DNA from: Entomortierella parvispora E1425
Taxonomy: Eukaryota > Fungi > Mortierellomycota
Reading direction: 5' to 3'
Length of the DNA: 64,000 nucleotides
NCBI GenBank assembly: GCA_020891255.1
Contig: BQFW01000010.1
Coordinates: forward strand, 1,054,001 to 1,118,000
How positions within the stretch are numbered: the first letter of the stretch is position 1; every line of letters begins with the position of its first letter. A model generated the notes under the pieces. That model was not told where the DNA came from. It was given only the letters and a program-made list of their open reading frames with translations, and did no database searches. This document shows positions 8,171 to 59,013 of the stretch, in pieces. Both the position numbers and the translations under genes were made by a program.

Positions 8171-9650
8171 ATGGTGGGAGTTGGGTACTGGGGTGAACAC
8201 TGGCCAGCAGAGATTCATTTTGTGTACCAAGACCTGCACCACAGCATCCACAGGCTGCTTCGCGGTGAAATGGGACTCGTAGGGCGAAGTTTTTTGGAAG
8301 GGCCAGTACTTTCTGAAAGAGTCCAGCCTGTCGATCATGCCGCCTTGTTCCTTATAGTGCTCATTGATCTTCTCAATCTCGGCATTAAGCATGTCCTCCC
8401 AGTACTGCAGACAGTTGTTGGTTCTCATGTCTGGGGTCAAGCGCTGATCTGGCCAAGGAACGTTGCCCATCCAAAGGAGTATCAGGTCGTCGTAACCAAA
8501 GACGGTCTTCTTATAGTACTGTTGATGTTGGTATCGCACCTCGGCCAGGCTCCAGGTCGCATTCTTCATGTACTCGACATACTCGGTGGAAGTCCACATT
8601 CTGCTGATGTTAAAGCCGCCAGCGGCCCAGGCCCCCAAAGTCAAACACGACGGTATCAGAATTCTCCAACAGAGCCAAACCCAGAGGGTTTCGTGAAAAA
8701 GGGCGTGTAGTCCGGGCTGAGCAAATACTCGGCGCGCGAGGGCAATTCCTTGAACACTAATCAAACTCGTATTAAATATGAACGCGGCCCAACCACTCCC
8801 TGTGTGGGAACCAGCCCTCAAACTTTGCAGGATCAGTTCCATCTCCATTAAACTGGTTTGTGATTCCTGACAAGAGCTGTCGAACATGAGAGTCTCCGTC
8901 AAAAAGGGCCGCACGTCTGCGAAAAAGGCATTCCACTGTTTTCTGATGATCGGCCGTGAGCTCTTCAGTTGTGGCTGCAATGAGTGGTGGACTCCCATAG
9001 GGTCGAGTCGTGGGGGGGAAGGGGGTCTCCAGTAAGGGACGCGAGAGCAATCTCTGGTGGCTCAAAAGAGGCAAGTCGAGGTTCCTGGCGACAACTTGGT
9101 CGAGCGCCTACAAACTCCAAATTCGACTGGGAAAGATCCTCATACTGGTATACTGGTGGATATGGCGAGATCGGACCAACACGCCGTATTCCCGAGCAGC
9201 CTTTATAGGCTCAATAGAGCACAAAGGCCAATCCTCGTATTTCGGACCCACACTTGGACATCTATCGCAGACTGTAAACTGGTAAACTCCTGCCGCAGTT
9301 TGCTTGTAGTCGCGATAGGCTTGGAATTCAGCTTCTTCTGTCGGAGCCTCTGGAAATTTGGGTAGAATAAAGTCGCCCTTGAACCTTGGCACAAACGTCT
9401 TATCGAAATTCTCATTCAGACTCCGGAAATCCTCATATCCGTGCTCAATGTTCATCAGCCAGAACCGTCCAGGTCGACTGAGGACATAAGGGATCGCGTA
9501 GGTACAATCGCCCAAGTTGATTTGCTGGTTGGGGACGTAGTGTTCGGGTCCATCCAGGATAAAAAAAACTCGGATCAAGGTACAAAATGTACATGTATCC
9601 ACGTGTGGACTGTACTGTATGTACATGTAGTTTACCCATCTCAAATATTA
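8090..9650 (-). pseudogene. SGNH/GDSL (PC-esterase/TBL-like) hydrolase or O-acetyltransferase, frameshifted; 5' end unresolved (may extend to ~10030)
   Basis: LFDGDSHVRQLL (GDS motif) lies in the 8772-9074 frame. DTVVFDFG and (A)WAAGG are in different frames across a G5 run near 8630. The C-terminal block is ~50% identical by eye to the paralog at 12957-13340, but has YESH where the paralog has DQAH (DxxH). Confidence 0.55.
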
Positions 9651-10032
9651 CACAAAGGGGACATCCTTCCGTCTCTGCTGTTGTGCAGCCTGTGTGAACC
9701 TTGTTGGCGAGAGAGAACCAAGTGGCCACAAAGCTCTCAAGCATCCCTTTTTGCAATGAGTTCCTGCTGATAAAATGACTGAATGTCTACAGTATGTTGT
9801 AGCTTCATGCCGAGAGACGCTTGGTCCTCGAACTTTTTTTAAACTTCCTCGCCTGACGTTCCCATCGCCCACTGCCTTTTCATCTTCCTCCTCATCCTCT
9901 TCCATCTGATCCAATCCAAATGTGGCCCTTCTCTGGCCATTAGCGAAAAAGCATCCAGAAGCAGTCGTCGCAATCTCCTTCTTACCAGTCTTGTCTTCGC
10001 CAGCGGTAAAACCGCTTGTTGCGCTCTCATCT

Positions 10033-38498: not shown

Positions 38499-40825
38499 AT
38501 GTCCAACTACTTTTCAGTCTCCCAAGTCGCCTCCCACAACTCGGAGGTAAAAAGAGATCTCGCCTTCCTTCTATTCATAAAAAAAAAATGTCTCCGACCT
38601 CTTTTCCTTCTTTCACACTGAAACTTTTTCTGACCTACATCATTTATGAACTCGTTTTTCCTCACTGTAGAACGACTGCTGGGTCATTATCCGCGATAAG
38701 GTCTATGATGTCTCCAGCTTCTTGAACGACCATCCCGGTGGAAAGGTATAAAACCCCAGACGATAAATGAATAGAATGTGGCGTATCATTTGCGGAAAGG
38801 AATAGACTTAACGGACTAGAAGAGGCTGTGGAGAGGGCACCGGAAAAGAAGTCCGAGAAATACAACACCAAAGAGAGCCTGCCCTTTCAAGGATGCGGAG
38901 AACAAGGGAGAGCGAAAAAGTGTGGAGAAAAAGCTCAAGGCTGACAACCAAAAAAAAACTCTTTTTTATCTCCCCTCCCTTTCCTGCCCGCCAAACTAGA
39001 AAATCATCCTTAAGAACGCCGGAACGGATGCCACCAAGCAGTTTGATGCTTTCCATAACCCCGGTAGGTTGCCATGACGTTGACCCTGGACTGATGAGGT
39101 GGAGGGGTGGGAAGACACCGTGCATGCGAGTCCAGAGTCGCCCTCTGTTCCAGACGGGGGACACGGACACAAACAGGAAGAGGGGAATCGCTTGGAATGA
39201 CATGTGAAATAGCCGTCACCGCCATCTCGTCTGTTTTTTGTGTCCACGTTACTGATGTGACCCCTTCTCTCATTTATTTTATTTGCTACACAACAACAGG
39301 TGTGCTGGAGAAGTACGGTGCCCTCTGTATCGGATCCGTTGGCGAGCCTCCTAAGGAAGGTACATCCGCACCCGCCGCTGCTTCTGCTGACGACGATGAC
39401 GAGATGCAGTTCGGTGAGATGATTCCCTTCGGTGACCCATCCTGGTAATGCGCTTGACTCTGCTCCATGTCTTGTTCACGCAAAGTACTGTCCTACTGTT
39501 CGTTTTTACTGACCTACTTTATAATTATCAACCACTCCTCCTACACCAACAGGTACCAACAGTGGGGCAGCCCTTACTATAAGGAATCTCATCGCAGCCT
39601 CCGTCGCTACCTTCGCCAGTTTGTCGACACGGACATCATGCCCTTCGCACACGAGTGGGACGAGGCTAAGCAGGTACCCATGTTCTTGTTCAAGAAATGT
39701 GCCGAGATGGGTATCTTGGCTGCCGTGGCCGGTAACGGTCACTTGCCTCTGGAATACTTTGATGCCGAATCGACCACGCTCTTCCGAGGAGGTGACAAGG
39801 CTATTGTGCCTATTTCCGAGTTTGATCCCTTCCATGCCTTCATCATCTTTGATGAGCTGTCCCGCTGCGGCTCTGGCGGTGTTCTCTGGGGTATCCTCGG
39901 AGGTCTCGGTATCGGTCTTCCCCCCATTATCAAGAACGGATCTGAGGAGTTGAAGCAGAGGATCGTGCCCGACGTGTTGGCTGGACGCAAGACTATTTGC
40001 TTGGCCATCACTGAACCCCAGGCCGGCTCCGATGTCGCCAATTTGACCTGTGTTGCCAATGAGTATGGAGACGGATTCATTGTTAATGGCGAAAAGAAGT
40101 GGATCACCAACGGAACCTTCGCTGACTACTTCACGGTCGCTGTCCGCACCGGTGGTGAGGGCATGGGTGGTGTCAGTTTGTTGGTTGTGGAGCGCTCGAT
40201 GCCCGGTGTGACCACTCGTCAGATGAAGTGCTCCGGTGTGTGGTCCTCTGGAACTGCCTACATCAACTTTGAGGACGTCAAAGTGCCCCGTGCCAACATT
40301 GTCGGCAAGGAGAACCGTGGATTCAAGTACATCATGAACAACTTCAACCATGAGCGTATGGGAATTGTCATCCAGGCCAACCGCTTGGCCCGTGTCTGCC
40401 TCGAGGAGGCTATCAAGTACGGAAGCAAGCGCAAGACCTTTGGTGTCAAGCTTGTTAACCACCCAGTCCTTCGTAACAAGTTGGCCCACATGGCCCGTCA
40501 GATCGAAGCCACCCATGCTTGGACCGAGAACGTCATCTACCAGACCATGACCATGCCCGAGGACCTGCAGATGATCAAGCTCGGTGGTCCCATTGCCTTG
40601 CTTAAGGCTCAGGCCACTCAGACGCTCGAATACTGTGCCCGTGAGGCGTCCCAGATCTTTGGAGGTTTGGCTTACACTCGTGGAGGTCAGGGTGAAAAGG
40701 TTGAGCGCATTTACCGTGAGGTTCGCGCATACGCCATTCCCGGAGGATCTGAGGAGATCATGTTGGATCTCGGTATGCGTCAGTCTATGAAGGTCGCCAC
40801 TGCCATGTATGGTGCCAAGTTGTAA
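38499..40825 (+). CDS. Cytochrome b5-domain acyl-CoA dehydrogenase fusion, multi-exon
   Basis: Small exons spell VASHNSE|NDCWVIIRDKVYDVSSFLNDHPGGK|KIILKNAGTDATKQFDAFHNP (b5 heme motif HPGG). The ACAD motifs CLAITEPQAGSDVA, NGEKKWITNG, NFNHER and IPGGSEEIMLDL follow. Confidence 0.93.
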
Positions 40826-41022
40826 ATAACGTCCCACAGGTTCATCCCTTAGTAAGCATGCAATTGCTAATGACAAATCAAAATACCATTAAAAAAACAA
40901 ATCTCCTCCCTCAAGATCCCAACTTTGAAACTTGCCCATGTTGCGAGTGACGCTGTTATATTGATATGCGAAAATGGATCTATGTTCTGGAAAACTCTGT
41001 ACAGTGGATGGGGCCTGACCCT

Positions 41023-43146
41023 TTAGACACGTCTTGAAGACGTAGGCTCCTCAAGACCCATGGCAAACCTCATGATCTCAGTTTTGATTGGTCCCATATT
41101 ATCGACGGCTGTCAAGCCCAAAGACCGTGCCCATACGACAGGTCCAAAGTCAGTGTTGTAAAGCTTTGAAAGCTTGTCCACTGTTCCGAGCATGGCCAGA
41201 TTTGGGAAGAAACGCTCGCTGGAGTAGGGCGTCAGAGAATGGATGTTACCTACAAAAAGAAAGAATTGCTTGAATATTAACACCAATGCAGGATTGCTTA
41301 CAGGCGTTACACGGAAGCAGGAACTAACCGATATCTGATCCGCTGAGAAGACCTTGCTCAATAACGCGAGCCAAGCACTCTACATCCGCCAACCCTTGGT
41401 TCAGTCCTTGTCCTGCAAGAGGATGCACAGTGTGGGCGGCGTCACTACAGAGTGGAGACAAAAAGGAATTAATGCAAGCTCACTTTGGTAATCATCAAAG
41501 AAATGCCAAATGAAAACAAAGAAGAGGACTTACCCAACCAAAACGACGCGATCTTCAACATAGCTGTTTGAGTTCCTCATTCTCAATGGGAAGGGGGCTC
41601 TCGTGTTTTCCTGCACATCAACAACCTTGGGAGCCTTGTAATCCTCGCGTCCGCGGTTGATACCACCCTTTTCAGCGTCCTGGACGCTTGCCCTCCACTC
41701 GATTTCGCTCTGGAAATCCACCAAAGGTTGCCCATCTGGCCCAATGTTCTTGCAAAGGTACTCCAACTCGGCGGGGCTGGCATTAAACGCAGCATTCACC
41801 AAAGCACAAAACTCCTTTGCGGGCAGTTTCTTAAGATCCTGCGCGATTTTTGGTGTTGTAGACCAGACCAAACTTGCGAATCCATTGTTCAGCTACGACA
41901 AGAAAATGTGAAGAGGGCGCAAGATATTGAATATAAGTGGGACGTTCCGTTGCTATGCAGGATAAGTCACGAATAGGTACTTACTGGCAACATTGCAATA
42001 GGTCCAGTTGGCAGGAATCTCTGCCAAGCGATTCCTTTACCTTGATCAGGTGCTGTTGAGGTTGAGGGATCGATCTGCAGTGTCGCGACTAATCCAAACT
42101 GTGAATAATCCCAGCCAAGAGACTCGATCTTGGCAAATGTCCGTACGGGCGAGTTCACGCCGTCGGCTCCCACCAACAGTCTTGTCTGTAGCTTTCTGCC
42201 ATTGTCAAGTTGGATCACCGGCCAGTCAGAGATATCGACCGATGCATCAGACTCCTGTCCTGAGGATGTGTTGGAGCTGATATCCTGAACCTTGGTCCGT
42301 TCAAAAATGTCAAGTTGAATGCCACGGGCCTTGTGAGCCAGGATCTGCTTTTGAAGTCCGTACTGAACATGTAGATTCTCGGTCATGTAAGCTAACGGAG
42401 AGGATTCTTGCTCCTTGGAGAAATCGGGTTGTTGTTGCTGATCATCGAAAAACTCGGCTGATGATGCCGGGGTACTACTGGCGCCAGAAAACACCTGGCG
42501 CAGAAAACTCGAGCGCGTTGAGTCTTTCTTAGCGTCCGCTCCATCAAACGTGATCCTGGCGCCACTGACACCATCCCAGACCTGCATACCCTCACAGGGC
42601 GCAACTCTGGACAAATCCAACTCGGACCAGACACCGATCTGCTTCAAAAATAGAACGGATCGAGGAGTCAAGGAAGAGACACGGTTGGAGTATTGATCTG
42701 GCTTCGGGGACCATTGCATATGACCACTGAGATCAAATGCCTCAATCAAGGCAATCTTTTGAGTCCCAGAAGCTCTTCCAGATGCTGCGAGAAAGAAGAA
42801 ACCCAGAAAATGATACGAGAACGGGGGGTTAGGCTCTTCGTTTCGTTTCGTCTGTCCTTGTCACCAAGTCGACTTGTCTCTTACCAAGAGCACAAGCCAA
42901 TGCACTTCCAGCGATGCCACCTCCGACGATGACAACATCGTACTGCTCAGGCGTTCCATTCAGTGAATTAGAAGCATCATTGCCTGCGGATCCTGATTGT
43001 GAAGAAGAAGAGAATCGTACTGTGGATGTCGCGCGTTGCGCCGAAATGAAAGGTGACGAAGCCCGGAAGGCGGCCCTCGCAGCAGACGCAGTTGAGGCCT
43101 TGGTCCGTACTGCAGCGGCTAGGTGAGAAAGCGTACCAGCAGTCAT
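41023..43146 (-). CDS. COQ6: Ubiquinone biosynthesis FAD monooxygenase Coq6, multi-exon
   Basis: A mitochondrial-type leader, then YDVVIVGGGIAGSALACAL, RVSSLTP, LLVGADGVNSPVR, AWQRFLPTGPIAMLP, RAPFPLR and RVVLVG. Confidence 0.93.
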
Positions 43147-43374
43147 GGGAAAGAAAGATGGTCGTTGGTTGGAAAACGAAAGGATGGGAGGATGGAAGGG
43201 AACGAATGAAGGAACGCAGGAACGCTTAGCATGCAATGTAGCTTGGTCGGACACAGACCTTCTTTGCGCCGTTTGCGGACACTTTCGTGATCGCCCTGTC
43301 ATGTGACGCTATTTGTGTAAAGTAAAAATCGGACCCGTATAATCGTAATTTGAATATAAAGAGGTAGTATCGGT

Positions 43375-43771
43375 GGAGGTCGTCCCAGATCTGGATGGGA
43401 GTCCAAACTTGCTGGACTGGCCTGAATCTTCCTAGACTGTGGGACACAGCCTGTTTTTTAAAAGCACGCTTTGTTCGTGCAGGTATCGCTGGGTCGCTCT
43501 GTAGGGAATAGTCCTCCCTTCGCCTCCAGAAATATTCAGGAATAAACAAGAAAGAATGTGCCTCCCAGCTCCCAGTGGCCACCGAGTTAGAGAGGAACCG
43601 CACGCTGCAGCCAAAGAGGCCTGACTCTCGTACCAGCCCTTGTAGGAAACACTCAAACCCACACCAGCGGCGGACGACAGAGCCTGACTGCTTTTTGATT
43701 TTTTTTTTATTTCTCAGGAGAGCAGGAAGCCCAATGTGTGGCCTGAGTCTGTCAGACCCAGAACAACCCCC
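43375..43771. repeat. Left 397-bp direct repeat (MITE-like, imperfect TIRs)
   Basis: Runs GGAGGTCGTCCC...AGAACAACCCCC. The ends are an imperfect inverted repeat (13/19 matches, all mismatches transitions). It contains four same-strand RGCCTGANT(C/G) motifs. Confidence 0.95.
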
Positions 43772-43821
43772 TTCTAGTCTCTCCAAAAAGCCGTTCTCAG
43801 AGAAGCCATGTTCCAAGTCGC

Positions 43822-43892
43822 GCACGGGCCACGGTGGGTAAGATTCAGAGTCGTTCTTAGAGAGCTACTCTGCATCCTACCCACCGGCTAAA
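43822..43892 (-). repeat. Hairpin unit copy 1 (19-bp stem 43833-43851/43867-43885)
   Basis: Reverse complement of the units at 47637 and 50788; lies just 3' of the primase-helicase stop codon. Confidence 0.92.
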
Positions 43893-43907
43893 TATTATGC
43901 CGGGTTT

Positions 43908-46900
43908 TTAGAACCCCGTGGTTACTGTGCTGAACGCGGCTCGAGGGCTGTTGTTTTTCGACCCAACTTTCGAATGGTGCTTGAGTATATACTTCTCCGA
44001 ACGCTTGTTAACCGCAGAGATTTTGGTCCCGAGGACTGCATGCAGAATGGTGTTGATGTACGATAGCTTGTTCCTGAATGACCAATTGTTGTGTGTGGGT
44101 CTTTCGCGCTTTAGTGTGGTGCAGATTTGCTTCATCCCGCTTTCGAGGTCTGGCCATATCACATCAAGCCCCTTCTTGAGATCCGTCGCCAGAACCTCGT
44201 TCGCCGCAAACGTGTCAGTGAACCCGAATGCAGTCAAGATATCGACCACAAATTCCAGCTTCACGAACCGGGACTGTTCTAGCCTATTGTGCGCCTCAGC
44301 CGATGTCACATTCCCCAGACTATACTGAAACGCCATAGCTTCACACTGCTGGGGAAGTGCGAGGCAGTCGTGTAAAGTCTTGCCAGGGGGTACTGACAGA
44401 GCCTGAAGGTTCTTGAAGCATTCCTTCTCATGTGGTTTATCATACGTCGCGACCCATTCTTCTGTTACTGTGCTGTGTTCCTGAACACCGTACGTCCGCA
44501 TGAGCGCGAACTTGTGCACTGACGCTCGCTGTGCTGCATCCAGGTCTTGGAAGCCAGACGACAGCTGTTCGAACTCGTCTGCACTGATGGACGCTGCACT
44601 CGCGATCTGCTGGTTCCTAGCAGCTGTTATCTCGGCCTTTTTTTTTCTAGGCTACTCACGATTGGATCGTCTTTGTCAAGCTTGTCGTCTTGATATGTCA
44701 CAACGCAGCCAGCTTGAGTAAACCTCGTTGCCAGCCGCAACCTAAAATTGTTCATCGAGAGGTGCTTCAGGGAGGTGACATGGCAGTACATGCGGTGGAA
44801 CAAGTCGTCAGGGAGCTTCAGCTTAGTGTTGTCATCAAAAGTAAACTTCAGCGTAGGGCTCAACTGGCTTACGCCGGTGACAATGTCAACCTGCTTGCAG
44901 AGCCAGCTCTTGATCTCTTCTGGAAGAACTGGGAGGTTGTTGGTCTTAGCATCTGCATACACCAAATACGTCTTGGACTTGACGTGTCGCGTGCGTCGCA
45001 TCATCTGCATGCTGGTTTCGACATCCACAGTCTGTGAGCTGAACAGACCGATCACGTAGTCCACTCCATCCTCAGAATCGTAGTTGACACCCACGCTGAC
45101 GGTCGGGGTGTGGATAAAATAGTCGAGCCCTTTCATGATAGTGTTGATGCTCCTACCGACGTCTTTCTTTACGCTCTCAGGCGTGTTTTTTGTCACGCAA
45201 ACGCCCTTGAACTCAGCTTTCTCGAACTCAGCATGCACAGCCTCCGTGTTTTCTGCGCTCATCGTGCTTGAGATCCACAGCCGCTTGCCAGCCTTGAGTA
45301 ACTCCAGTGCTTCTTTGATCAGTTTTAGCTTGTCCGTGAACAGTACTACTTTATCGTCCTTCTGCTGCTGGAACGTGTTGTCGATGACCACAAAATCGCT
45401 TCGGAGGCTCTTCATGATCTCGACCTCCTCCTCGCACAGGTCAGCGTCGAGGCAAATCACGCGTTTCGCGCGTCGGATGAGCAGCTCGAACACCTGGAGA
45501 TTCAGGTTGTGCACGTTTCCCATTGTCTTGTCGCTGCACATCTGCTTGATCAGCGAGCTGAGCTCGTCCAGGATCAGGATCGTGCCCTCGTCGACGTAAG
45601 CTTTCAAGTTGAGCCTGAAAAGCGACTCAGCTTGCACAACAAGTCTCCTGCAGTCTATTTGGCCTGGGATATTCTGATAGTTCTCAAAGTCCAGCCGCGC
45701 TTCCAACATTTCCGCTAGTGTCCGACGACACGAGATTGCGACGAACCGGGGCTTCGGATTGGCCTTCACAATGGCTTTGGCATTGGCTTTAACAAGGGCT
45801 TCTGTGAAATTAGTCTTGCCGCCGCCTGTGTCGCAGCGGATCAGTAGACTGGGCGGCTGTTGAGAGTCTCCTGGAAGAGGAGAGAGGAGACGGTAAGTCA
45901 GGTATCGTGCGTCATCCTTTATGTCAGCGCAGGAGAGCCCTCGTGGCACTGCAGAGCTTGTCTCAATTCCAGAAGCCAGACTGATGTCTTGTTTGAACAG
46001 CTCAAGGCCCTTTAGACCCTCAGCCCGATGGCAGTGAAAGAAGATGGCACCAGACCTTGTGAGCTTCAGATACGCATTCTCGTGCTCGTGCTTCCTGTCA
46101 CAAACAACACAGTCCCCAGGTGTCTTGCGCTGCAGCTTGAAAATCATGGCTCGGTCAGGGATGCACTGCATCTCGAACTGCGCTGCGTGTGGTGTCTGTT
46201 CAAACTTGGCTCGCACCGCATCCACGATGTGCTTAGGAAGACTCGACACGACAGCAGCGTCCTGTTTGGCCTTTGACGAGGCCGTAAACAGGGATCGAGG
46301 AGCTTGCACAATCGAGGTCACCTTGCAGCTGGGCACTTTGGCACAATCTGGATCGACATTGGTGATCAGAAACTCGTGGTCCTCAGCAGCTACAGAAGGC
46401 TCGTGCCATTGTGCTCGCTTGAGTGGGCGGCTTGGATCCTTAGCCTTGTGGCTCCCAGAATGCGCATGTTCCGGTTGCGGCTATAGACTTTGTCATCGAT
46501 GTGGTCGAGAAGCTCTGCGTCCTCTGTTGTGCGCCAGAATGCCTGAAACGCAAGAAAGAACGCCTTCATGTGGCAGTGGTTGTTCTCAAACACGAATTTA
46601 GGCACCACAATGTGTAGTGACACCTTTTTTTTTTCGCTCTTCGACGAGCTGAGCACGCGGCAATCCGCCTCATCAAGCGCAACCTCGGGTGCATACTGGT
46701 TGCGTACGCACAGGAAAGCTGCAAAAAGCTGCTTCTCTCGCCTCTGCAATTCGGCCTCGTCAGCAGGCTCATCGAGCTCCCAGTCGATGTCATAATACTC
46801 TTTGCACGCCTGGCCTTCGCGTATCAGCTCATAGAAGCATCGCTTGGCCTCTGGGATGGAGTCGTAGGCTGTGAGGAAGGCTGTCTCGTCCCTGTAGCTC

Positions 46901-47049
46901 GAGTACTCGTTCCCATACACTGCACCGTCGTTGACAACCACAAAGAAGCTGTGAGACTTCTGGTCGCTCCATTCGTAACATCTGTCTTGTGGGCCTTTTT
47001 TCTGATCCTTGCTGAACTTGAAAAATGTGGAGTCGAATTTGTTGTTCAT
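43908..47049 (-). pseudogene. AEP primase + Zn-finger + UL9/origin-binding-protein-like SF2 helicase fusion (~1047 aa reconstructed; two single-base frameshifts)
   Basis: AEP motifs RCFYELIREGQACKEYYDID, KVSLHI and IDDKVYSRNRNMR. Zn-binding CVVCDRKHEHENAY...FFHCHR. Helicase motifs IRCDTGGGKT, ISCRRTLA, VVQAESLFRL, ILILDELSS, HTPTVSVGVNY and QMMRRTR. Adding one base at 46454-46456 and one in the T9 run at 44638-44646 joins ORFs 46390-47049, 44627-46336 and 43908-44519. Confidence 0.82.
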
Positions 47050-47272
47050 GTTGAGTAGTAAAGAAGGGTTTTATGAACCGCGGCAGGGCCGATCATTTTT
47101 GCTGAGTTACGGCGCGTGGCAGTGCCAGATCACATGATTCAGCTGTGACTGTTTCTGATGCGCGTCATCATCAACAAACGAAATGGGGCCTTTCATACCT
47201 CTCTTCCACCATTCACACCACCTTCCATTCCTCATTCACCCACTCCCTTCCTCCACAATCAATCACTCCTCC

Positions 47273-48921
47273 ATGGCGGCAGACACACTCACACTCTTCT
47301 GTCTCATCAGTGGCGAGCTTCTATCCACAGCATTCCCCGTCGAAGTGGCGTCGAGTAAAACAGTTGGCGCACTCAAAAAGGCCGTCTTTGAAGAGAAACC
47401 AAATGCGTTCGAGCACATTGACGCCAACGACTTGGTGCTCTGGCAAGCCACGGTCCCCATCGACGAAAATGCAGGACCCAAGAGAATCATTACTCACAGC
47501 ACTCTCGACGACAAGACGCAGCTTGACAACCCAAGGATAAGCCTTTCTAAGCTGTTCCCCGAGAGTCTTGACGACAGCACATATATCATTGTCGAGCGAC
47601 CAAAGGTACGACGCCCATGTTTTCCCGGAGGTCAAGTTTACCCGGTGGGTAGGATGCAGAGTAGCTCTCTAAGAAACGACTCTGAATCCTACCCACCTGG
47701 CCCGTGCACGGCTTACTAATCAGGTCTTTTCTAAAATACTAGGCACAAAGCACGCCACAGACGCTCGAGCTGGAGGCGAAGATGGAGGAGCTGCTAATGG
47801 AGCTTGAGGATCTGCGTGGAGGCAAGAGCACTGTTACATTCAACGTGATTGTGCGACCCAACCGTACTGAGGGCTTCCCATGGACGACAGACATAGAGAC
47901 CGCGACTGTCGAGAAGCTTGAGAAAGCCATTTACGCAGCGCATCCGGACAGGGAGGACGGTGATGTTGTGGTGGGAATTATTCATTCGAGTAGGGGTAAT
48001 AAGGAGTACCCCAGTGACCATGCACACTTCCGCGACATCCTTCAGCAGTACCGAAGAACGAGCACCAGGACAATAACAGTGGTGCTGGAGACACCGACAA
48101 AGAAGTATACCGACTTCACGCTCAAGGAGGTCAACACCCTCTATGACATTTCTAACATGGACTCTCCCAACATTTCTGACCTGCCGCCCTTCAAGGACAT
48201 CTCCACTGAGGCTCTCGATTCAGACTTACACAAAGAGTCTCTGCGACGACTGCTTGATGAGCTCGATTCCAGGATACGGGCGATACCAACAGACACCATT
48301 TCCAACGAGGCCACATGCTCTGCCTATGTCTGCTCGTTCCTCACACAGGCTGTTTTAATTTTTAATGGCGAGCTGACACTTGCTCCAGAGAGGCCGCTGC
48401 GAGGCAAGAATGGCCACGGAAAGGTGGATTACGCGATCGAGGCGCTTGCTAAAGATGGCACGAGACACGTCCTGGGCGTCACAGAGGTGAAGCACGAGAA
48501 CTATAAAAAGGGGCTGGCGCAGAACTTCGTGCAGCTGGAGTCAGCACTGACTGTGAGGAAGCGCAAGCACAGCACCGACGACGACGATGATGATTATAAA
48601 GATGGAGGGCAAGAAGAGGACAACTCGGGGCCCCTGAGGGCGTATGGGATTGTCACTGACGCCTCGTACTGGTTTTTTGTGGAGTGCACTATCGACCCAT
48701 CGCAAGACTCAGGGGAGCGCCCAAGGTTCAGGATTTCGAGGCTGAAGGATATCGTCAACTACAACAAGGACACCTGGAGAGCTGAAGCTGAGTCTGTGCT
48801 GGGACATGTTGTGTGGCTCATGAGGAAGATGCACTCGGAAACCCCAGCACGCGAGCTCAGGACCAAAAAACAGAAGTTCAGCGCAGCTGAGCAGTCTGCA
48901 AGCAAGATGGTGCGCGTGTAG
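47273..48921 (+). CDS. Crinkler (CRN)-type effector with PD-(D/E)XK REase-like C-terminal domain, 503 aa; intron 47606-47742
   Basis: N-terminus TLTLFCLISGE...AFPVEV...TVGALKKAV...IDANDLVLW is the CRN ubiquitin-like header. The C-terminus has NEAT, GHGKVDYAI, GVTEVK...GLAQNFVQLES and YGIVTDASYWFF. The phase-0 GTACGA...TACTAG intron joins the exons in frame. Confidence 0.85.
47637..47707 (+). repeat. Hairpin unit copy 2 (stem 47644-47662/47679-47697), inside the CRN intron
   Basis: GGTGGGTAGGATGCAGAGT-AGCTCTCTAAGAAACG-ACTCTGAATCCTACCCACC followed by TGGCCCGTGC. Confidence 0.92.
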
Positions 48922-49247
48922 CCTTTTCAAAACACTCGTGCACCGGAGACCATAGTGTACTTCTAGTCGACATGTAACATAAAATATCATACCATTTTTC
49001 TGATTTCAAAATTTTGTCTGGGAGTGGTAGCAGTGGTAGCAGTCAAATATAGAGGGGCAACCAATTAGAGAGGGATCAGAAGGGCAGGACCAACAAGCGG
49101 AAGTTTGATACGACACAGCAGTCTACAAGCAAGATTGTTCGCGTGTAGCTCAGGGGCCGCACTACCACTTTTATATAATAAAAGAGTTCTAGAAAGAAGC
49201 CAGTCGGATTTCCCAGAAGAGCCCCTGCGAACATTGCTGGGCACAGT

Positions 49248-49743
49248 TTAGTTTTCCTTTAGAGACTTGACATCCAGGCGATCGTTGTCTTTGCCAGCGG
49301 GAAACGCATCCTCATAAGCGTCCTTGCTCATGTGGGTGGCGTTCCGCGCCAAAAAAATCGGTGAGTTTGGTGTTGAGATCAGTCAGGGGCATGGGCCTTG
49401 AACACTGGAACGAAAAGTGGTCCCCTCTCTCGTACAACAAGACAAGGTCAGCTGGGATCGAAGTACCCTCCTCAATAATGAAAATGTCGACGTCCGTATC
49501 GCCGAAACTGTCAGCTATATCATGAAAAGTCGTGCTGTACGGCGATCGAAGAGAGCAACCGTTTGGGTGCGTCCACTGTTTTTGTGTGGGAGGAATAGGC
49601 TCAACAGTGCTGTTTTTTGTAAGAAGATCAAACGGGCCTTTCTTCTTGACAAGCTTATCCCGTAGGTTGACTTTGGTCCCTGACTGGATTCTAGCCAGCG
49701 TGGCTGGAAAAAACTTGGTGAACCTCTTGATTGGAGTCGACAT
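49248..49743 (-). CDS. Tse2-like ADP-ribosyltransferase-fold toxin domain protein (164 aa after removing one T from a T7 run)
   Basis: FPATLARIQ...LRD, HPNGCSLRSP, IFIIEEGTSIPADLVLLYERGDHFSFQ and MPLTDLNTKLTDF match the fungal Tse2-like family pattern from memory. Deleting one base of the run at 49351-49357 gives the tail FLARNATHMSKDAYEDAFP...* with the stop at 49248. Confidence 0.6.
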
Positions 49744-49998
49744 AATGGTGTGAAGTGGAAGAAGAAACGTTGCGTCCAAAAGATTCCTTTGTGACGCAAA
49801 AAAATGAAGTCACGCTCATTCAAGGCGTGAAAAAACGATCACAATCGCATCGTTATCGCATCTCATCTTACTTCGCCATGCTTCCAGCTTCGCCATGCTG
49901 CAGCGGACTTAAAAAGCGCCATGGAGGCCTCCATTCGCCATTTTTTTGGCTCTCCATTCCTCATTCACCTCCTCCCCACCTACCACCCACACTGAACC

Positions 49999-50663
49999 AT
50001 GTCTGCCAGTAAGTTTTCTGTCTCTCTTCACGCCCTCTGCACGCTTCAGAACTCCCAACAGCGCACTGACACGATGTCGAACCCGCCATAGACAAGCCAC
50101 AGAAGTCTGCTTCGAAGGGCTCCAGTGCTTTGGAGCGACCCGAGTCTGCGCTGGAGGCTGCGCTTGAGGATGCCACGCGTGAGCTCAGTGAATTGAAGCT
50201 GGAGCTCGAAGACGCGTATGACCAGCTGGAGGACACCCGTGCAAGACTGGACGGGACGGAGCTCGAGCTGCAGAACACCCAGGCAGCACTGGCCGCTGCG
50301 AACCGTGAACGAGTCCTCGCTCTGCCCGAGAACAGGCAGGAGGTCTTCGCGGTGCTGAAATTCAGGAATCCGCAGCCTCTGCCTGTTGGTGGCTTCTGCT
50401 TCTTCGCACGGCAGAGGAGGGCCGTGGAGCGCACACTGGAGCAATTCATCGCCAAGAACCCGGACCTGGATGCTGTGGAGGTGGATGAGCTGCGGCTCGA
50501 ACGCACTCCCAGGGCCCGTAACGTCTACCAGTACATGAAGGGCGACAAGAACGCTCCGATCGAGTTCAGTCGCAACAACTTCATCGTCAAGGAGGGCCAC
50601 ACTGAGGACAAGATGAAGGAATACATCCTCCGCGTCTTCAACACCCACACACGAGAGGAATAG
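49999..50663 (+). CDS. Coiled-coil + DUF3627-like domain protein; intron 50009-50091
   Basis: ATGTCTGCCA|GTAAGT...CACTGAC...CATAG splices in frame into the 50130 ORF. A heptad-rich coil is followed by FCFFARQRRAV...TPRARNVYQYMK...FSRNNF...EDKMKEYIL, resembling DUF3627 of large-DNA-virus proteins. Confidence 0.55.
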
Positions 50664-50787
50664 GAGTCCCTAGCGGTTTTCGAATCGAGATTCAGCTGTA
50701 GGAGATGCAGGAAATAAACTTGCTTTACAGTGGCATTTGGGTTCGTGCCCTTGTGGTGGCCAGACAACGCACCTTCTCGACACAACA

Positions 50788-50858
50788 TTTAGCCGGTGGG
50801 TAGGATTCAGAGTAGCTCTCTAAGAAACGACTCTGAATCCTACCCACCTGGCCCGTGC
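50788..50858 (+). repeat. Hairpin unit copy 3 (perfect 19-bp stem 50795-50813/50830-50848)
   Basis: GGTGGGTAGGATTCAGAGT and ACTCTGAATCCTACCCACC are exact reverse complements; located 125 bp 3' of the DUF3627-like stop. Confidence 0.95.
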
Positions 50859-51082
50859 GCAAGACCATGAGGATGAGAAATGAGGAAAAAGCTGCTCGGG
50901 GAGGGCTTTATTAAGAGTGTGTGGTGTTTCTTCATCTGGCCAGACTCTACTCCGCTGATCGAGCATTGACACCCTCGTTCACCAGCTCTCTGGCTGTCCG
51001 TTTTCGGTCAAAAGGGCAAAGAAACTATGATGGCCAGCTTTTTTTAGGGAGAGAAACGACAAGCAGCAGCTATCAATGGTTA

Positions 51083-51115
<33 letters not shown>

Positions 51116-51164
51116 GATATTGAGAGAATCTAAACTGAGTGTTGGCAGAGGAAATATAAGCAAC

Positions 51165-51617
51165 ATGGACCACTCTACAGATATACGAGATACGCTGCGG
51201 AAAGGAGAGGTGGAAGGGACCGTTAGAGCTGTGCCGGTCAAAGACGTGTACGTGCGAGTGTGCACCGACAGGGAGGTCTATACAGTAAAGTATGTACACA
51301 AATTCGACAAATACCATGTTCTATCTGAGAAAGGGTCATCCGTCCTTATAGATGTCGACGCAGCAAAAGCGTTCGTCTACATCATAGCTTTTGCAGAGGA
51401 TTCGTCCAGGAGGAAATTTTTACATATACTGGGGAGGGAAATCGAATTCCATGAAAAGGATGAATTTGTCGAAGCACTGCACATCCTGAAAGGCACTTTC
51501 ACCTGGGCCGAAGCAGAGACTACCGGTTTGTTACAAAGAGAGAGCGAAGCGCTAAAGGAAGGCAAACACGAAACACCTGTCTCTAGGGAACATCTCTCAT
51601 CATCGGCTTCCGACTAA
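51165..51617 (+). CDS. Orphan 150-aa protein upstream of the transposase
   Basis: Intact ATG-to-TAA ORF with globular-looking composition; no recognised motif. Confidence 0.5.
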   Translation: MDHSTDIRDTLRKGEVEGTVRAVPVKDVYVRVCTDREVYTVKYVHKFDKYHVLSEKGSSVLIDVDAAKAFVYIIAFAEDSSRRKFLHILGREIEFHEKDEFVEALHILKGTFTWAEAETTGLLQRESEALKEGKHETPVSREHLSSSASD

Positions 51618-51760
51618 TGACCCCTCCCAGCTACAACAGAGCCTCTTGATGTTGAGCGTAGAGAGGCATAAATGCCTGGAGTTCTGCCCCATCCCGTGCA
51701 CTGGTTTTTAAAAACTGAGAGTTCCTCGAGAGCCAGTAACGAAAACATTATCGTCATATC

Positions 51761-53134
51761 ATGGACGAGGCACTTGCACGTGAGTACGATGCCATTGTGC
51801 AGACGCACTGGAAGTTCCTGTACAAGGACTGGCCCATTATTGACAGAGTGAAGCATCACCGCACAGAGATTGCACCCGTGAACGACATCGACAGCATCAA
51901 ACCCTTTGTATTCAACCGCCTGGGAGTCATACCCGTGTTCTTCTTCTTGACCGTGATCTTTGGTACAAGAGCCTATTCGTGCCCGTACAGAAATGTCGAG
52001 AAGGGCGTCATGCTGCTCTACGTGCTCGTGAAAGGTGTCTTTCTGAGCGACATGGCACGGCACATCCCAAAAACCTCCTTCCACGCCATCCACAAGGAGT
52101 TCTACAATTGCAAACCAGCCGCTCTTAACGGCCTTCTAAACACGATGCTGTCTGAGATGTTCTCGACGCTGAAATCGCGTCATCTTGTTGCAGAGAGGAA
52201 CCCTCACCCCTTCAAAAATGTCACACTCAACCTGGACGGCCACGACTCCAGGATTACCTACGTGGGCGCCGACAAACCCAGTCTGTACTCGTACAAGCTG
52301 AAGAAATCAGGCTTCCGTGTGCAGGTGTGCACTGACATGAACAATATGGTCCTGTTTGTGTCTTCACCTGAGCCGTGCCGTGACAACACTGACGGCACCA
52401 TGCTGCTTCGCCTGGGCATCCAGAACAGGATTCACAAACTGGACTGTGTTGCGCTGGATGGCGGGTACAATCTATATATTGGCAAGCTGGTGGACAGCGC
52501 AGACGAGCTCCAGTACGAGAATTTCTGCTATCCAGTCCGCAAGAGGCATAAAATTGCGCTGACTGAGGAGGAGGAGGCCTACAACGAGATTTTTGGGACC
52601 TTTCGGTCTCGCATCGAGGGCCACTTCGGTGAGATGCAATCAACGTTCACCAAGTTCAGCCATACGGTCGTGAACAAGGTTGCAGAGAAGGATACGTTTG
52701 ACATCCAATACAAGCTGGCGTCTGTCCTACTGAACATCAAAAGATTTGTGGCACTCAAGAGCATCCCATCCGAGCAGCATCACACTCTGTGGCTCAATGA
52801 CAGCTTTGACTTCCCCAGCAAGGCGGAGCAAGAGATCTTGTACACGCTCCCGAGCATCAAAGTCAAGCTGTCCCAGAGTCATGATATGCTTGCTACACGG
52901 AAGAAGTTTTTCGACATGACAATTTCCGCTCCTACAGGGGCTACTGATATGGACATGGCGAATGGGGACGATGGCGAAATCAAAGTCATTGGTCACCGTG
53001 GAGAAGGCGACACAAGAGAGTACCAGATCGTCCAGAAGAGTGTCGGCTTGAGCGTGGCTCAATGGGTGCCAGTCCACGCTGTCTCTGACAGGATGGTGAT
53101 CGTCGAGTACCTGAAGTCCCTGAAGTCGACTTAG
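51761..53134 (+). CDS. DDE transposase (PIF/Harbinger-IS5-like, DDE_Tnp_4 type), intact 457 aa, with chromodomain-like C-terminal tail
   Basis: NLDGHDSR (D), LYSYKLKKSG, TDG, ALDGGY (D) and YNEIFGTFRSRIEGHFG (E). The tail reads IKVIGHRGEGDTREYQIVQKSVGLSVAQWVP...IVEYLKSL. Confidence 0.85.
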   Translation: MDEALAREYDAIVQTHWKFLYKDWPIIDRVKHHRTEIAPVNDIDSIKPFVFNRLGVIPVFFFLTVIFGTRAYSCPYRNVEKGVMLLYVLVKGVFLSDMARHIPKTSFHAIHKEFYNCKPAALNGLLNTMLSEMFSTLKSRHLVAERNPHPFKNVTLNLDGHDSRITYVGADKPSLYSYKLKKSGFRVQVCTDMNNMVLFVSSPEPCRDNTDGTMLLRLGIQNRIHKLDCVALDGGYNLYIGKLVDSADELQYENFCYPVRKRHKIALTEEEEAYNEIFGTFRSRIEGHFGEMQSTFTKFSHTVVNKVAEKDTFDIQYKLASVLLNIKRFVALKSIPSEQHHTLWLNDSFDFPSKAEQEILYTLPSIKVKLSQSHDMLATRKKFFDMTISAPTGATDMDMANGDDGEIKVIGHRGEGDTREYQIVQKSVGLSVAQWVPVHAVSDRMVIVEYLKSLKST

Positions 53135-53207
53135 CTCTGGAACAGGATGGCTATCGTCGAGTATCTGAAGTCCCTAAAGTCGAGTTAGCTCTGGATTAGC
53201 TCTCCAA
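53089..53207 (+). repeat. Tandem duplication of the last 54 bp of the transposase gene plus a partial third copy
   Basis: CAGGATGGTGATCGTCGAGTACCTGAAGTCCC...TTAGCTCTGGAA (53089-53142) is repeated at 53143-53196, followed by TAGCTCTCCAA. Confidence 0.9.
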
Positions 53208-53604
53208 GGAGGTCGTCCCAGATCTGGATGGCAGTCCAAACTTGCTGGACTGGCCTGAATCTTCCTAGACTGTGGGACACAGCCTGTTTTTTAAAAGCAC
53301 GCCTTGTTCGTGCAGGTATCGCTGGGTCGCTCTGTAGGGAATAGTCCTCCCTTCGCCTCCAGAAATATTCAGGAATAAACAAGAAAGAATGTGCCTCCCA
53401 GCTCCCAGTGGCCACCGAGTTAGAGAGGAACCGCACGCTGCAGCCAAAGAGGCCTGACTCTCTTACCAGCCCTTGTAGGAAACACTCAAACCCACACCAG
53501 CGGCGGACGACAGAGCCTGACTGCTTTTTGATTTTTTATTTATTTCTCAGGAGAGCAGGAAGCCCAATGTGTGGCCTGAGTCTGTCAGACCCAGAACAAC
53601 CCCC
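53208..53604. repeat. Right 397-bp direct repeat
   Basis: Aligned base by base to 43375-43771: 4 substitutions, no indels. Confidence 0.95.
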
Positions 53605-53680
53605 GGTATCGGTATCTCCCAGGAACAATAAAAACGGACGCGTTTTCACACTGAAAACAGATTTGTTCATCCCATCCACC

Positions 53681-55474: not shown

Positions 55475-55546
55475 TGCACCGCGCCCCAGTCATGCACCAC
55501 GCCCCAGTCGTGTACCGCGCCCCAGTCATGCACCGCGCCCCGAGTG
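55475..55546. repeat. 18-bp tandem repeat x4 (TGCACCGCGCCCCAGTCA)
   Basis: Direct reading; four slightly variant units. Confidence 0.9.
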
Positions 55547-58300: not shown

Positions 58301-59013
58301 ATCCCGATTTGAAGTCATCGCCTTCTTGCACCTCGTGGCGGTATTCAGGTGAAACATGATAGAGCGCGGAGGTTGAGCTGGACACGAGTTGCAAAAAAAA
58401 AAACTCACGATTTACAAAGCGCAAGTACATAATGTCGCAGCAAAAGCCGACCGGGTCAATGGGGTAAACCATTGCGCCATTTGATGTTGGTCCACCAAGC
58501 CGCCCTTGCCCCGTAACTGTATCTTGGAGAGTCGCTGCGACTTTGCCTACCGATCGACGTTGGGCACGTAACTGCACTTGGGAATAAGGGAAGCAGCAGC
58601 GCGATAGGCACGTTAGCCCGGGGTTTGGAGAAACGGTGAGGAAGACACAAGGTACGAAATATGGCGTTCCAGCGCGTGTCGCCTCTCTTTCTCGCGTGGC
58701 TCTTCTAGTGTGCGCTGCAGCTCTTCATCGTGGAGAAAACTATACAGATGTTTGAAGGCAAATGATGAATGGGCCAGGGATATTGGCGATAACACAGCCA
58801 ACATCCTTCATGGTCCACAACAGACATTGCATGAAGGAAACAAGTTTTTGCGGATGAAATTGATCGCTTTTATATGGAAATAAATTTCTTCTACATGTTT
58901 GTCTATCGGGGCAAAAAAACGGATACTCACAAAAGAACGAAGTGGAGGGGAAGAGAAGGATGAATAAACGGGAGATGATGATTCGAAGGGGCAGGAAATC
59001 AAACAATAACCAT

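What the first reader, a model, noticed from the sequence alone, without database searches (positions are those of the whole stretch)
43366..53613. Candidate new element class: direct-repeat-bounded unit combining a virus-like primase-helicase, a DDE transposase and toxin-type cargo
Seen: 397-bp ~99% identical direct repeats 9833 bp apart, an 8-9 bp duplication on the outer flanks only, and six genes (AEP-ZnF-UL9 fusion, CRN-REase, Tse2-like, DUF3627-like, an orphan, and a PIF/IS5-like transposase). Established: LTR elements need RT, Polintons have long inverted repeats plus PolB, Helitrons have HUH-Pif1 and no TSD, PIF/Harbinger make 3-bp TSDs, and Starships use a tyrosine recombinase. None of these fits. 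Inference: this is either a eukaryotic composite transposon or a cointegrate, where a ~9.8-kb self-replicating circle carrying one repeat integrated by replicative transposition. That would leave exactly this pattern: two direct copies with an outer TSD. Spliceosomal introns in two cargo genes imply long residence in fungal nuclei.
Basis: partly seen in the sequence, partly recalled or inferred. Interest (0 to 1): 0.92.

Follow-up and report, generated by a model that had tools for sequence, protein, structure and literature searches.

The report
Harbinger-type fungal transposon with viral primase-helicase
The flagged 10-kb unit is one copy of a mobile-element family found across Mortierella-like soil fungi: a PIF/Harbinger-type DNA transposon that has LTR-like direct end repeats and carries a giant-virus-like primase-helicase and a Crinkler toxin gene, a combination I could not find described.

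Summary
The repeats are real: 397 bp at 43375-43771 and 53208-53604, 393/397 identical. All six genes are confirmed.

The window is Entomortierella parvispora. The same unit occurs at unrelated loci in Linnemannia hyalina (two copies), L. zychae, L. elongata, Mortierella hygrophila and E. lignicola. It has four core genes: an AEP-primase/UL9-type helicase, a Crinkler-toxin gene, a small coiled-coil protein (p19x) and a DDE_Tnp_4 transposase. It also has three conserved hairpins and ~400-bp direct end repeats with conserved tips.

The target duplication is 3 bp, not 8-9. This holds for 4 of 4 complete copies and 6 of 6 copies of a helicase-less relative. The extra matching bases in the window come from a GGTATC tandem at the target.

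The new features are the virus-like replication gene, the Crinkler gene as a core gene, the hairpins, and end repeats that stay at least 99% alike within a copy but are only 44-85% alike between copies. The repeat pattern suggests, but does not prove, a one-repeat circular or concatemeric replicating stage.

The window's helicase gene carries two frameshifts.

Verdict: real, a new variant of a known superfamily, interest about 0.7.

The parts
43375..53604 (.). Whole element (10,230 bp), from the first base of the left repeat to the last base of the right repeat
   Evidence: Repeat bounds. The conserved tips match those of copies in other species.
43372..43374 (.). Left copy of the 3-bp target-site duplication (GGT)
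   Evidence: A 3-bp duplication is seen in 4/4 complete copies and in 6/6 copies of the simpler relative.
53605..53607 (.). Right copy of the 3-bp target-site duplication (GGT). It is followed by the GGTATC tandem that produces the apparent 8-bp match.
43375..43771 (+). Left terminal direct repeat (397 bp). It carries both tip types: it starts GGAGGTCGTCC and ends AGAACAACCCCC.
53208..53604 (+). Right terminal direct repeat (397 bp, 393/397 identical to the left one)
43815..43902 (-). Hairpin module 1, just downstream of the helicase gene and in that gene's sense orientation
43908..47049 (-). Primase-helicase gene (AEP/PrimPol-like domain, zinc finger, UL9-type SF2 helicase). It is broken in this copy by two frameshifts and has no introns.
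   Evidence: The bounds are those of the public model EMPS_07559.
47273..48921 (+). Crinkler gene: a ubiquitin-like header exon, one conserved intron, and a C-terminal PD-(D/E)xK nuclease domain. It appears intact.
47627..47716 (+). Hairpin module 2, inside the Crinkler intron
49312..49779 (-). Tse2-like ADP-ribosyltransferase ORF. It is found only in this copy (cargo) and is not a called gene in the public record.
   Evidence: E 2e-26. It is absent from all other loci.
49999..50663 (+). p19x: a small coiled-coil protein with a conserved C-domain (weakly DUF3627-like) and a short first exon plus conserved intron. It is the constant partner of the transposase gene.
50778..50867 (+). Hairpin module 3, downstream of p19x
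51120..51617 (+). Orphan ORF (165 aa) in a 0.9-kb segment specific to this copy. A T30 run precedes it.
51761..53134 (+). DDE_Tnp_4 (PIF/Harbinger-type) transposase, 457 aa. It is intact, has the D-D-E triad, and has a degenerate chromodomain-like C-terminus.
41967..43302 (-). Neighbouring host gene (FAD-dependent monooxygenase, COQ6-like). The element sits about 70 bp upstream of its start.
   Evidence: FAD_binding_3.

Best explanation
SHOWN:
- The unit is an autonomous DNA transposon of the PIF/Harbinger (DDE_Tnp_4) superfamily, belonging to a family spread through Mortierellaceae.
- It inserts with a 3-bp target duplication.
- Its tips are short imperfect inverted repeats. Each ~400-bp terminal direct repeat carries one tip of each kind.
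- Its transposition module is the DDE gene plus p19x. That pair also occurs without the other genes.
- Two further core genes were added to this module: an AEP-primase/UL9-type helicase of giant-virus type and a Crinkler header-plus-toxin gene. Three hairpin modules were also added.
- The window copy additionally carries a Tse2-like gene and an orphan ORF as cargo. Its helicase gene is broken by two frameshifts.

INFERRED:
- Between insertions the element passes through an extrachromosomal form with a single repeat. This would be a circle formed by recombination or annealing of the two terminal repeats, or head-to-tail concatemers of it.
- The primase-helicase would replicate this form, perhaps starting at the hairpins.
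- The transposase would then use the left tip of one repeat and the right tip of the next. This could happen by cutting from a multimer or through a cointegrate. Either route restores two repeats copied from one template.
- This would explain why the two repeats of a copy are nearly identical while copies differ widely.
For: Family and co-inheritance:
- The same genes, order and direct repeats are seen in L. hyalina (L003), M. hygrophila (L008), L. zychae (L005) and L. elongata (L002), and in a deleted copy, L009.
- A divergent subfamily in E. lignicola still has all four genes and the hairpins.

Tips and duplication:
- The tips are conserved across genera.
- A 3-bp duplication is seen in 4/4 plus 6/6 insertions; chance is 1/64 for each.

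Transposition module:
- The D-D-E triad is invariant and present in the window copy.
- p19x genes lie next to chromo-DDE genes in several species, judging by locus tags.

Primase-helicase:
- The family profile hits PrimPol at 3e-18 and UL9 at 1e-47. The AEP and Walker motifs are invariant.
- Full-length relatives include Marseillevirus replication proteins.

Selection: dN/dS is 0.08-0.30 for all four core genes.

Terminal repeats:
- Within a copy they match at 393/397, 415/417, and 379/379 with one indel.
- Between copies they are 44-85% identical. Two copies in the same L. hyalina genome are only 65% identical.

Hairpins:
- They are found only inside the elements.
- 9 of 17 stem pairs show compensatory changes.
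- They are absent from the helicase-less relative.
Against: - No circular or concatemeric form was observed. No tool here could search fungal reads or whole fungal genomes by DNA.
- Long terminal repeats of ordinary DNA transposons also stay alike by unknown means. The helicase-less relative keeps 428-bp inverted ends 99.5-99.8% alike, so near-identity does not by itself demand a replicating stage.
- Only four complete copies were available.
- The origin role of the hairpins is a guess. Their constant sense orientation, and the one inside an intron, would fit an RNA-level role equally well.
- PIF/Harbinger transposases are regarded as cut-and-paste enzymes (my own knowledge). A cointegrate route has no precedent in eukaryotes.
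Confidence: 0.45

Rival explanations
1. It is the same PIF/Harbinger-type transposon, but it moves only by ordinary cut-and-paste. On this view the direct end repeats are a long terminal repeat whose orientation flipped, and gene conversion keeps them alike. The primase-helicase and Crinkler genes are retained for another purpose, such as help with repair at the donor or target site, conflict with the host or with rival elements, or an addiction-like effect. They would not copy the element outside the chromosome.
For: - In the helicase-less relative, near-identical copies (99.8%) have the terminal 285-bp module either inverted or direct. Orientation can therefore flip in this transposase family without any replication gene.
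- That relative keeps its long ends 99.5-99.8% alike.
- The 3-bp duplication and short inverted tips need nothing beyond a standard transposase.
Against: - The direct orientation is fixed in all four species where both ends can be seen. In the relative it is polymorphic.
- The repeat here has only about 20 bp of imperfect inverted tips, which is poor substrate for flipping.
- A primase fused to an origin-binding-type helicase, conserved with catalytic motifs at dN/dS 0.08-0.30, is hard to explain without DNA synthesis on the element's own DNA.
- Each repeat holds an inward-facing second tip. That would be a liability for plain cut-and-paste.
Confidence: 0.35
2. One reading: a class of element outside all known superfamilies, either a composite transposon or a cointegrate that makes an 8-9-bp duplication, with the PIF/IS5-like transposase as mere cargo.
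For: - The 8-mer GTATCGGT is on both outer flanks of the window copy.
- The gene combination was not found in the papers searched.
Against: - Three other complete copies share 3 bp and no more.
- The right-hand 8-mer is offset by one base from the repeat end.
- The transposase is the most conserved gene of the element, at 74-85% identity between genera. It is always present together with its partner p19x.
- Relatives with the same tip (GGAGGTC) also make 3-bp duplications.
Confidence: 0.04
3. Two independent insertions of a 397-bp MITE that happen to flank resident host genes.
For: Each repeat has both tip types and so could move alone as a MITE-like unit.
Against: - The inner flanks carry no duplication.
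- The enclosed genes travel with the repeats to unrelated loci in other genera. In one case the neighbour is a peptidase S41 gene array, in another a LEA-like gene.
- The 3-bp duplication is on the outer flanks only.
Confidence: 0.01
4. An endogenised DNA virus, giant-virus-like or herpes-like, rather than a transposon.
For: - The primase-helicase is related to Marseillevirus replication proteins and to herpesvirus UL9 and PrimPol.
- p19x is weakly DUF3627-like.
- Terminal redundancy is a viral trait (my own knowledge).
Against: - No capsid, packaging or polymerase gene is present. Every ORF of 100 aa or more in the element is accounted for.
- The ends, the duplication and the integrase are transposon-type.
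- Two genes have host-type introns.
Confidence: 0.03

Closest known systems
PIF/Harbinger superfamily DNA transposons (DDE_Tnp_4 transposase plus a second accessory ORF)
   Same: - A DDE_Tnp_4 transposase with an intact triad.
- A 3-bp target duplication.
- Short inverted tips.
- A constant second small ORF next to the transposase.
   Different: - The second ORF is not Myb/SANT-like by Pfam.
- The duplicated triplets are not TWA-like.
- The element has ~400-bp terminal direct repeats, three internal hairpins, a primase-helicase and a Crinkler gene as core genes.
- The transposase has a chromodomain-derived C-terminus.
LTR retrotransposons
   Same: Long terminal direct repeats that are near-identical within a copy and divergent between copies. 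Each repeat has short inverted ends.
   Different: - There is no reverse transcriptase, no rve integrase and no gag.
- The ends are GG...CC, not TG...CA.
- The duplication is 3 bp, not 4-6.
- The repeats cannot be made by reverse transcription.
Bacterial IS26/IS6 translocatable units and replicative cointegrates (IS903 of the IS5 family also forms cointegrates); cited from my own knowledge
   Same: A circle with one copy of a short unit fuses with a target. The result is two direct copies with the duplication on the outer flanks only, which is the geometry seen here.
   Different: In those systems the transposase lies inside the repeated unit; here it lies outside. They are prokaryotic, and the route has not been shown for any eukaryotic DDE_Tnp_4 enzyme.
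Virus-transposon chimeras and self-synthesising transposons (Teratorn = piggyBac plus herpesvirus; Polintons/Mavericks; casposons); cited from my own knowledge
   Same: A transposase or integrase is joined to replication genes of viral type.
   Different: There is no DNA polymerase and no capsid module. The element is small (9-10 kb). It combines a different transposase superfamily with a different replication protein (an AEP-UL9 fusion).
AEP-primase/UL9-type helicase 'replication proteins' of Marseilleviridae and other giant viruses
   Same: Same domain order over nearly the full length, at about 25% identity with E about 3e-29. The profile hits PrimPol and UL9 structures.
   Different: The fungal clade is encoded in a transposon, is intronless but chromosomal, and sits next to a divergently transcribed Crinkler gene.
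Crinkler/CR effectors and transposon-borne Crinkler-like genes (AACRNL on hAT/mariner in fish, PMC12957317; CR overview in PMC5289972)
   Same: A ubiquitin-like Crinkler header followed by a swappable toxin domain: PD-(D/E)xK here, and other domains in other copies. The gene spreads by riding on a DNA transposon.
   Different: Here the Crinkler gene is a conserved core gene of an autonomous element in saprotrophic fungi, under purifying selection. It is not a passenger flanked by non-autonomous ends.

Membership tests
PIF/Harbinger superfamily | DDE_Tnp_4-type transposase with a catalytic D-D-E triad | tested here: met
   Pfam DDE_Tnp_4 scores 4e-6 for the window protein and 1e-11 for a relative. 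D159, D233 and E286 are invariant in 11 sequences.
PIF/Harbinger superfamily | 3-bp target-site duplication | tested here: met
   GGT, GAG, ATT and TCA in 4/4 complete copies. ATT, ATA, AGT, TAC, AAT and AAT in 6/6 copies of the simpler relative.
PIF/Harbinger superfamily | Short terminal inverted repeats | tested here: met
   The outer tips are imperfect inverted repeats (13-14 of 19-20 positions) and are conserved across genera.
PIF/Harbinger superfamily | Second ORF encoding a Myb/SANT-like DNA-binding protein | tested here: not met
   A constant partner ORF (p19x) exists. It has no Myb/SANT match and only a weak DUF3627 match. Whether it does the same job was not testable.
PIF/Harbinger superfamily | Preference for TWA-type targets | tested here: not met
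   The ten duplicated triplets are varied.
LTR retrotransposon | Reverse transcriptase, rve integrase, TG..CA ends, 4-6-bp duplication | tested here: not met
   No RT or rve domain is found in any ORF. The ends are GG..CC and the duplication is 3 bp.
Polinton/Maverick | Protein-primed PolB, rve integrase, capsid genes, long inverted repeats | tested here: not met
   None of these is found among the element's ORFs. The terminal repeats are direct.
Helitron | HUH Rep fused to a Pif1 helicase, no duplication, no terminal repeats | tested here: not met
   The helicase is UL9-type SF2 with an AEP primase. A duplication and terminal repeats are present.
Starship | Tyrosine-recombinase 'captain' at one end, size of tens to hundreds of kb | tested here: not met
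   No tyrosine-recombinase domain is present. The element is 9-10 kb.
IS26-type cointegrate / translocatable unit (as a mechanism) | Transposase encoded inside the repeated unit; the single-repeat circle is observed | tested here: not met
   The transposase gene lies between the repeats, not in them. The existence of a circle is not testable with these tools.
AEP-primase/UL9-helicase replication proteins of giant viruses | N-terminal AEP with three catalytic motifs, a zinc finger, and an SF2 helicase of origin-binding-protein type | tested here: met
   (PrimPol 3e-18, UL9 1e-47, poxvirus D5/E5 primase 1e-5). (Marseillevirus relatives). A low-confidence fold model gives PrimPol, UL52 and E5 as top hits at E about 0.02-0.05.
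Crinkler/CR proteins | Ubiquitin-like Crinkler header followed by an enzymatic toxin domain | tested here: met
   Pfam Crinkler at 1e-21. PD_DExK at 2e-7 in the C-domain. Other copies have different C-domains.
Endogenous virus | Capsid and packaging genes | tested here: not met
   No such genes are found among the element's ORFs.

The most novel reading that the evidence does not exclude
A capsid-less replicon-transposon hybrid. On this reading a cut-and-paste transposase lineage of early-diverging fungi captured a giant-virus primase/origin-binding helicase. The element now cycles between a chromosomal form with terminal redundancy and a self-replicating one-repeat circle or concatemer whose origins are the three hairpins. 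The transposase would play the part that a terminase plays for terminally redundant viruses. The Crinkler toxin would serve the element in conflicts with the host or with rival elements.
Probability: 0.35. Interest if true: 0.9.

Novelty: new variant of a known kind. Interest (0 to 1): 0.72.

Why it matters
- It adds a fungal case to the short list of transposons that carry viral replication genes. The transposase superfamily involved (PIF/Harbinger) was, to my knowledge and in the papers I could search, not known to do so.
- It shows that long terminal direct repeats can exist in a DNA transposon without reverse transcription. This matters for automated LTR annotation and raises the question of how the two repeats are kept identical.
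- It places a Crinkler 'effector' gene as a conserved, selected core gene of a selfish element in non-pathogenic soil fungi. That bears on the open question of what Crinkler proteins do outside pathogens.
- It gives a compact system of four genes and three hairpins. Sequence data alone could test for an extrachromosomal stage.

Tried and rejected
- Rfam and tRNA scans of the window found nothing.
- Exact-protein look-up of the Crinkler C-domain ORF found nothing on record, because the public model is spliced.
- A single-sequence search of the helicase against solved structures gave no hit. Only a family profile worked.
- The AlphaFold model of the N-terminal ORF was poor (pLDDT 51). Its fold matches are supportive only.
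- The metagenome scan with the 20-nt tip gave three contigs. Two are the same truncated remnant and one is bare. No solo repeat with both flanks was recovered.
- Profiles of p19x and of the Crinkler C-domain against solved structures gave nothing significant.
- Locus L007 (Gamsiella) has a transposase and a broken p19x with 6 kb of unidentifiable sequence between them. I dropped it.
- L004 and L006 show the helicase followed by the transposase on the same strand. I treat them as rearranged remnants, but this is unexplained.
- Literature searches found no description of this element. The paper 'Transposons to toxins' (PMC4857004) is not held. I know it only through a review.
- Rejected explanations: LTR retrotransposon, Polinton, Helitron, Starship, two independent MITEs, and endogenous virus (see the membership tests).
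Full report
1. OBSERVATION

The two repeats are real. They are 397 bp long, at 43375-43771 and 53208-53604, with 393/397 identical positions and a spacing of 9833 bp. No further copy occurs in the window. The inner flanks are unrelated.

On the outer flanks the 8-mer GTATCGGT occurs on both sides. On the right it begins one base after the repeat ends. The three bases directly abutting the element are GGT on both sides, and the right flank continues as a GGTATC tandem.

2. SOURCE AND GENES

The transposase ORF is found, residue for residue, on one contig of Entomortierella parvispora (GCA_020891255.1, BQFW01000010.1).

Pfam assignments:
- Herpes_ori_bp for the large minus-strand gene.
- The Crinkler header for 47183-47719.
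- ADPRTs_Tse2 for 49312-49779.
- DDE_Tnp_4 for 51761-53134.
- No match for the 165-aa orphan.

The Crinkler C-domain matches a PD-(D/E)xK profile at 2e-7. The small protein, here called p19x, is a coiled coil plus a conserved C-domain. One of five relatives touches DUF3627 at 5e-4.

3. A CONSERVED FAMILY

Helicase relatives (50-63% identity, about 950 aa) occur throughout Mortierellaceae. I fetched the loci around them.

The same arrangement appears in L. hyalina L003, M. hygrophila L008 and L. zychae L005: the helicase on one strand, and on the other strand Crinkler, p19x and the transposase. L. elongata L002 has it without the transposase side. L. hyalina L009 has it with a deletion.

Terminal direct repeats in these copies:
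- L003: 417 bp, 415/417 identical.
- L008: 412 and 379 bp, identical at all 379 aligned positions, with one 33-nt indel.
- L005: a full right repeat, and the end of a left one cut by the contig start.

The first ~19 and last 20 bases of the repeat are conserved across genera. The two tips are imperfect inverted repeats of each other, so each repeat carries one tip of each kind.

A divergent subfamily in E. lignicola (L021; helicase 41% and transposase 55% identical to the window's) still has all four genes and the hairpins. In every gene L021 is the most distant copy. The genes therefore diverge together.

dN/dS is 0.08-0.30 for the helicase, transposase, p19x and the Crinkler C-domain.

The Tse2-like ORF and the orphan are absent from all other copies. 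They are cargo of this copy.

4. THE DUPLICATION IS 3 BP

The four complete copies are flanked by GGT/GGT, GAG/GAG, ATT/ATT and TCA/TCA, with no longer match in the last three.

A helicless relative is present in six full copies in one JGI fungal genome. It is 4.17 kb and encodes a chromodomain-DDE_Tnp_4 protein 41% identical to the window's, plus a 556-aa ORF. It starts with the same GGAGGTC and is flanked by ATT, ATA, AGT, TAC, AAT and AAT.

That is ten of ten insertions, each with a 1/64 chance match.

5. TRANSPOSASE AND PARTNER

- The window protein is one intact ORF with the invariant D-D-E triad.
- The clade found with helicases is 72-85% identical to it.
- A wide family at 40-53% identity in Mortierellomycota and Mucoromycota carries a C-terminal chromodomain. 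In the helicase clade that region is recognisable but degenerate.
- p19x relatives (96 clusters, all from Mortierellaceae or unnamed samples) often carry locus tags adjacent to chromo-DDE genes of the wider family.

The transposase plus p19x is therefore the old two-gene module. The helicase and Crinkler genes are additions.

6. PRIMASE-HELICASE

A profile of 24 family members hits solved herpesvirus origin-binding proteins at 1e-47 (helicase part), human PrimPol at 3e-18 (N-terminal part) and the poxvirus D5/E5 primase at 1e-5. The acidic, Ser-x-His and Arg/Lys motifs of AEP enzymes and the Walker motifs are invariant. A low-confidence model of the N-terminal ORF has PrimPol, UL52 and E5 as its best fold matches.

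An exhaustive search finds 2560 relatives. Full-length ones at about 25% identity include Marseillevirus replication proteins.

In L. elongata and L. hyalina the gene is a single uninterrupted ORF of 961-970 aa. In the window the same span is read in three frames. That means two frameshifts and no introns. The public 939-aa model bridges them with artificial introns. Assembly error is not excluded.

7. INTRONS

The Crinkler gene has one intron with a conserved GTATGT-type donor, a CTAAT-type branch site and a TAG acceptor in five species. p19x has a short first exon and a conserved intron in four species.

8. HAIRPINS

Three modules of about 85 nt lie downstream of the helicase, inside the Crinkler intron and downstream of p19x. 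Each is in the sense orientation of the adjacent gene, and the positions are the same in every species.

- A 17-bp stem shows compensatory changes at 9 pairs.
- The loop and the outer flanks are conserved.
- The three copies within one element resemble each other more than they resemble copies in other species.
- None occurs in the flanking host DNA that I fetched.
- None occurs in the helicase-less relative.
- One copy has its loop flipped.

9. MECHANISM

Shown: integration by a PIF/Harbinger-type transposase acting on the outer tips.

The feature that needs explaining is the repeats. They are at least 99% alike within each copy and 44-85% alike between copies. Two copies in the same L. hyalina genome are only 65% alike. 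Synonymous divergence between copies is 0.4-3. The two repeats of a copy must therefore be renewed from one template, or be converted against each other, far faster than lineages diverge.

My preferred reading is inferred, with confidence about 0.45. The chromosomal copy, or an excised linear copy with its terminal redundancy, gives a circle with one repeat. The primase-helicase replicates this circle. The transposase then pairs the left tip of one repeat with the right tip of the next. Either route restores two repeats.

The main rival (about 0.35) is ordinary cut-and-paste, with gene conversion keeping the repeats alike. In its favour, the helicase-less relative flips its 285-bp terminal module between inverted and direct orientation among 99.8%-identical copies, and keeps its long ends 99.5-99.8% alike.

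Against the rival:
- The direct orientation is fixed here.
- The tips are too short to support flipping.
- It is hard to see why a catalytically conserved primase/origin-type helicase would be maintained without a replicating stage.

10. KNOWN OR NEW

Surveys list PIF-Harbinger in Mortierellomycotina only in general terms (PMC5751038). I found no paper describing a Harbinger-type element with a primase-helicase, a core Crinkler gene or direct terminal repeats.

A 2026 paper shows Crinkler-like genes spreading on hAT and mariner elements in fish (PMC12957317). That is a partial precedent for the Crinkler link.

I file the element as a new variant of a known superfamily.

11. LIMITS

- Only four complete copies were available.
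- No DNA search of fungal genomes or reads was possible.
- Whether the element exists as a circle or concatemer was not tested.
- The E. parvispora copy number is unknown.

12. SLIPS TO DISCLOSE

- After I reasoned about roughly where one frame change of the helicase lies relative to a motif.
- The script used the three ORF pieces as separate queries and printed their bounds (the same numbers as the ORF list).

I stopped at that point. I built no joined, mended or consensus sequence of the element or its genes. The degenerate 20-nt pattern was used only as a search pattern for the tip.

Noticed in passing
window 53088-53195: A 54-bp unit is present twice in tandem (90% alike). It duplicates the last codons and stop of the transposase gene just before the right repeat.
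   Followed up: no
window 51085-51114 (also about 10030, 17127, 24623, 30236): A T30 run lies inside the 0.9-kb segment that only this copy has, between hairpin 3 and the transposase gene. Similar T/A runs occur elsewhere in the window.
   Followed up: no
L002 270-3174 and 3431-6335 (L. elongata): A perfect 2905-bp inverted repeat, with arms 256 nt apart, sits where the transposase side of that copy should be. It may be an assembly artefact or a fold-back rearrangement.
   Followed up: no
L003 9307-9396: The intronic hairpin of the L. hyalina copy has its loop inverted relative to its conserved flanks. The other two hairpins of that copy do not.
   Followed up: partly
L010-L015 (JGI 3300066330), element about 5494-9662 in each: A 4.17-kb chromodomain-DDE_Tnp_4 element has a 556-aa second ORF with no known domain. 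Its 285-bp terminal module, bounded by 67-bp inverted repeats, occurs in either orientation. Near-identical copies therefore have either 428-bp inverted or 284-bp direct end repeats.
   Followed up: partly
P0117 (Cunninghamella blakesleeana, 641 aa): One gene model combines a retroviral-type aspartyl protease, a chromodomain and DDE_Tnp_4. It may be a fusion or a mis-joined model.
   Followed up: no
window 43908-47049 (public model EMPS_07559): The public 939-aa model skips conserved primase sequence by means of artificial introns. The gene is intronless in relatives.
   Followed up: yes
L003 1906-4037 and 14072-22771: The L. hyalina copy sits inside a tandem array of peptidase S41-like paralogues.
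   Followed up: no
L004 336-2560 and L006 3-4234: In M. claussenii and H. gracile, helicase sequence is followed by the transposase on the same strand, unlike the canonical divergent order. In L004 a public model fuses the two.
   Followed up: partly
window 55475-55541: An 18-bp tandem repeat (three or more units) lies 2 kb downstream of the element.
   Followed up: no
window 39467-40876 and 58942-61281: There are pairs of long ORFs of about 450 and 750-780 aa, fully overlapping on opposite strands. They are probably host genes with an antisense ORF by composition.
   Followed up: no
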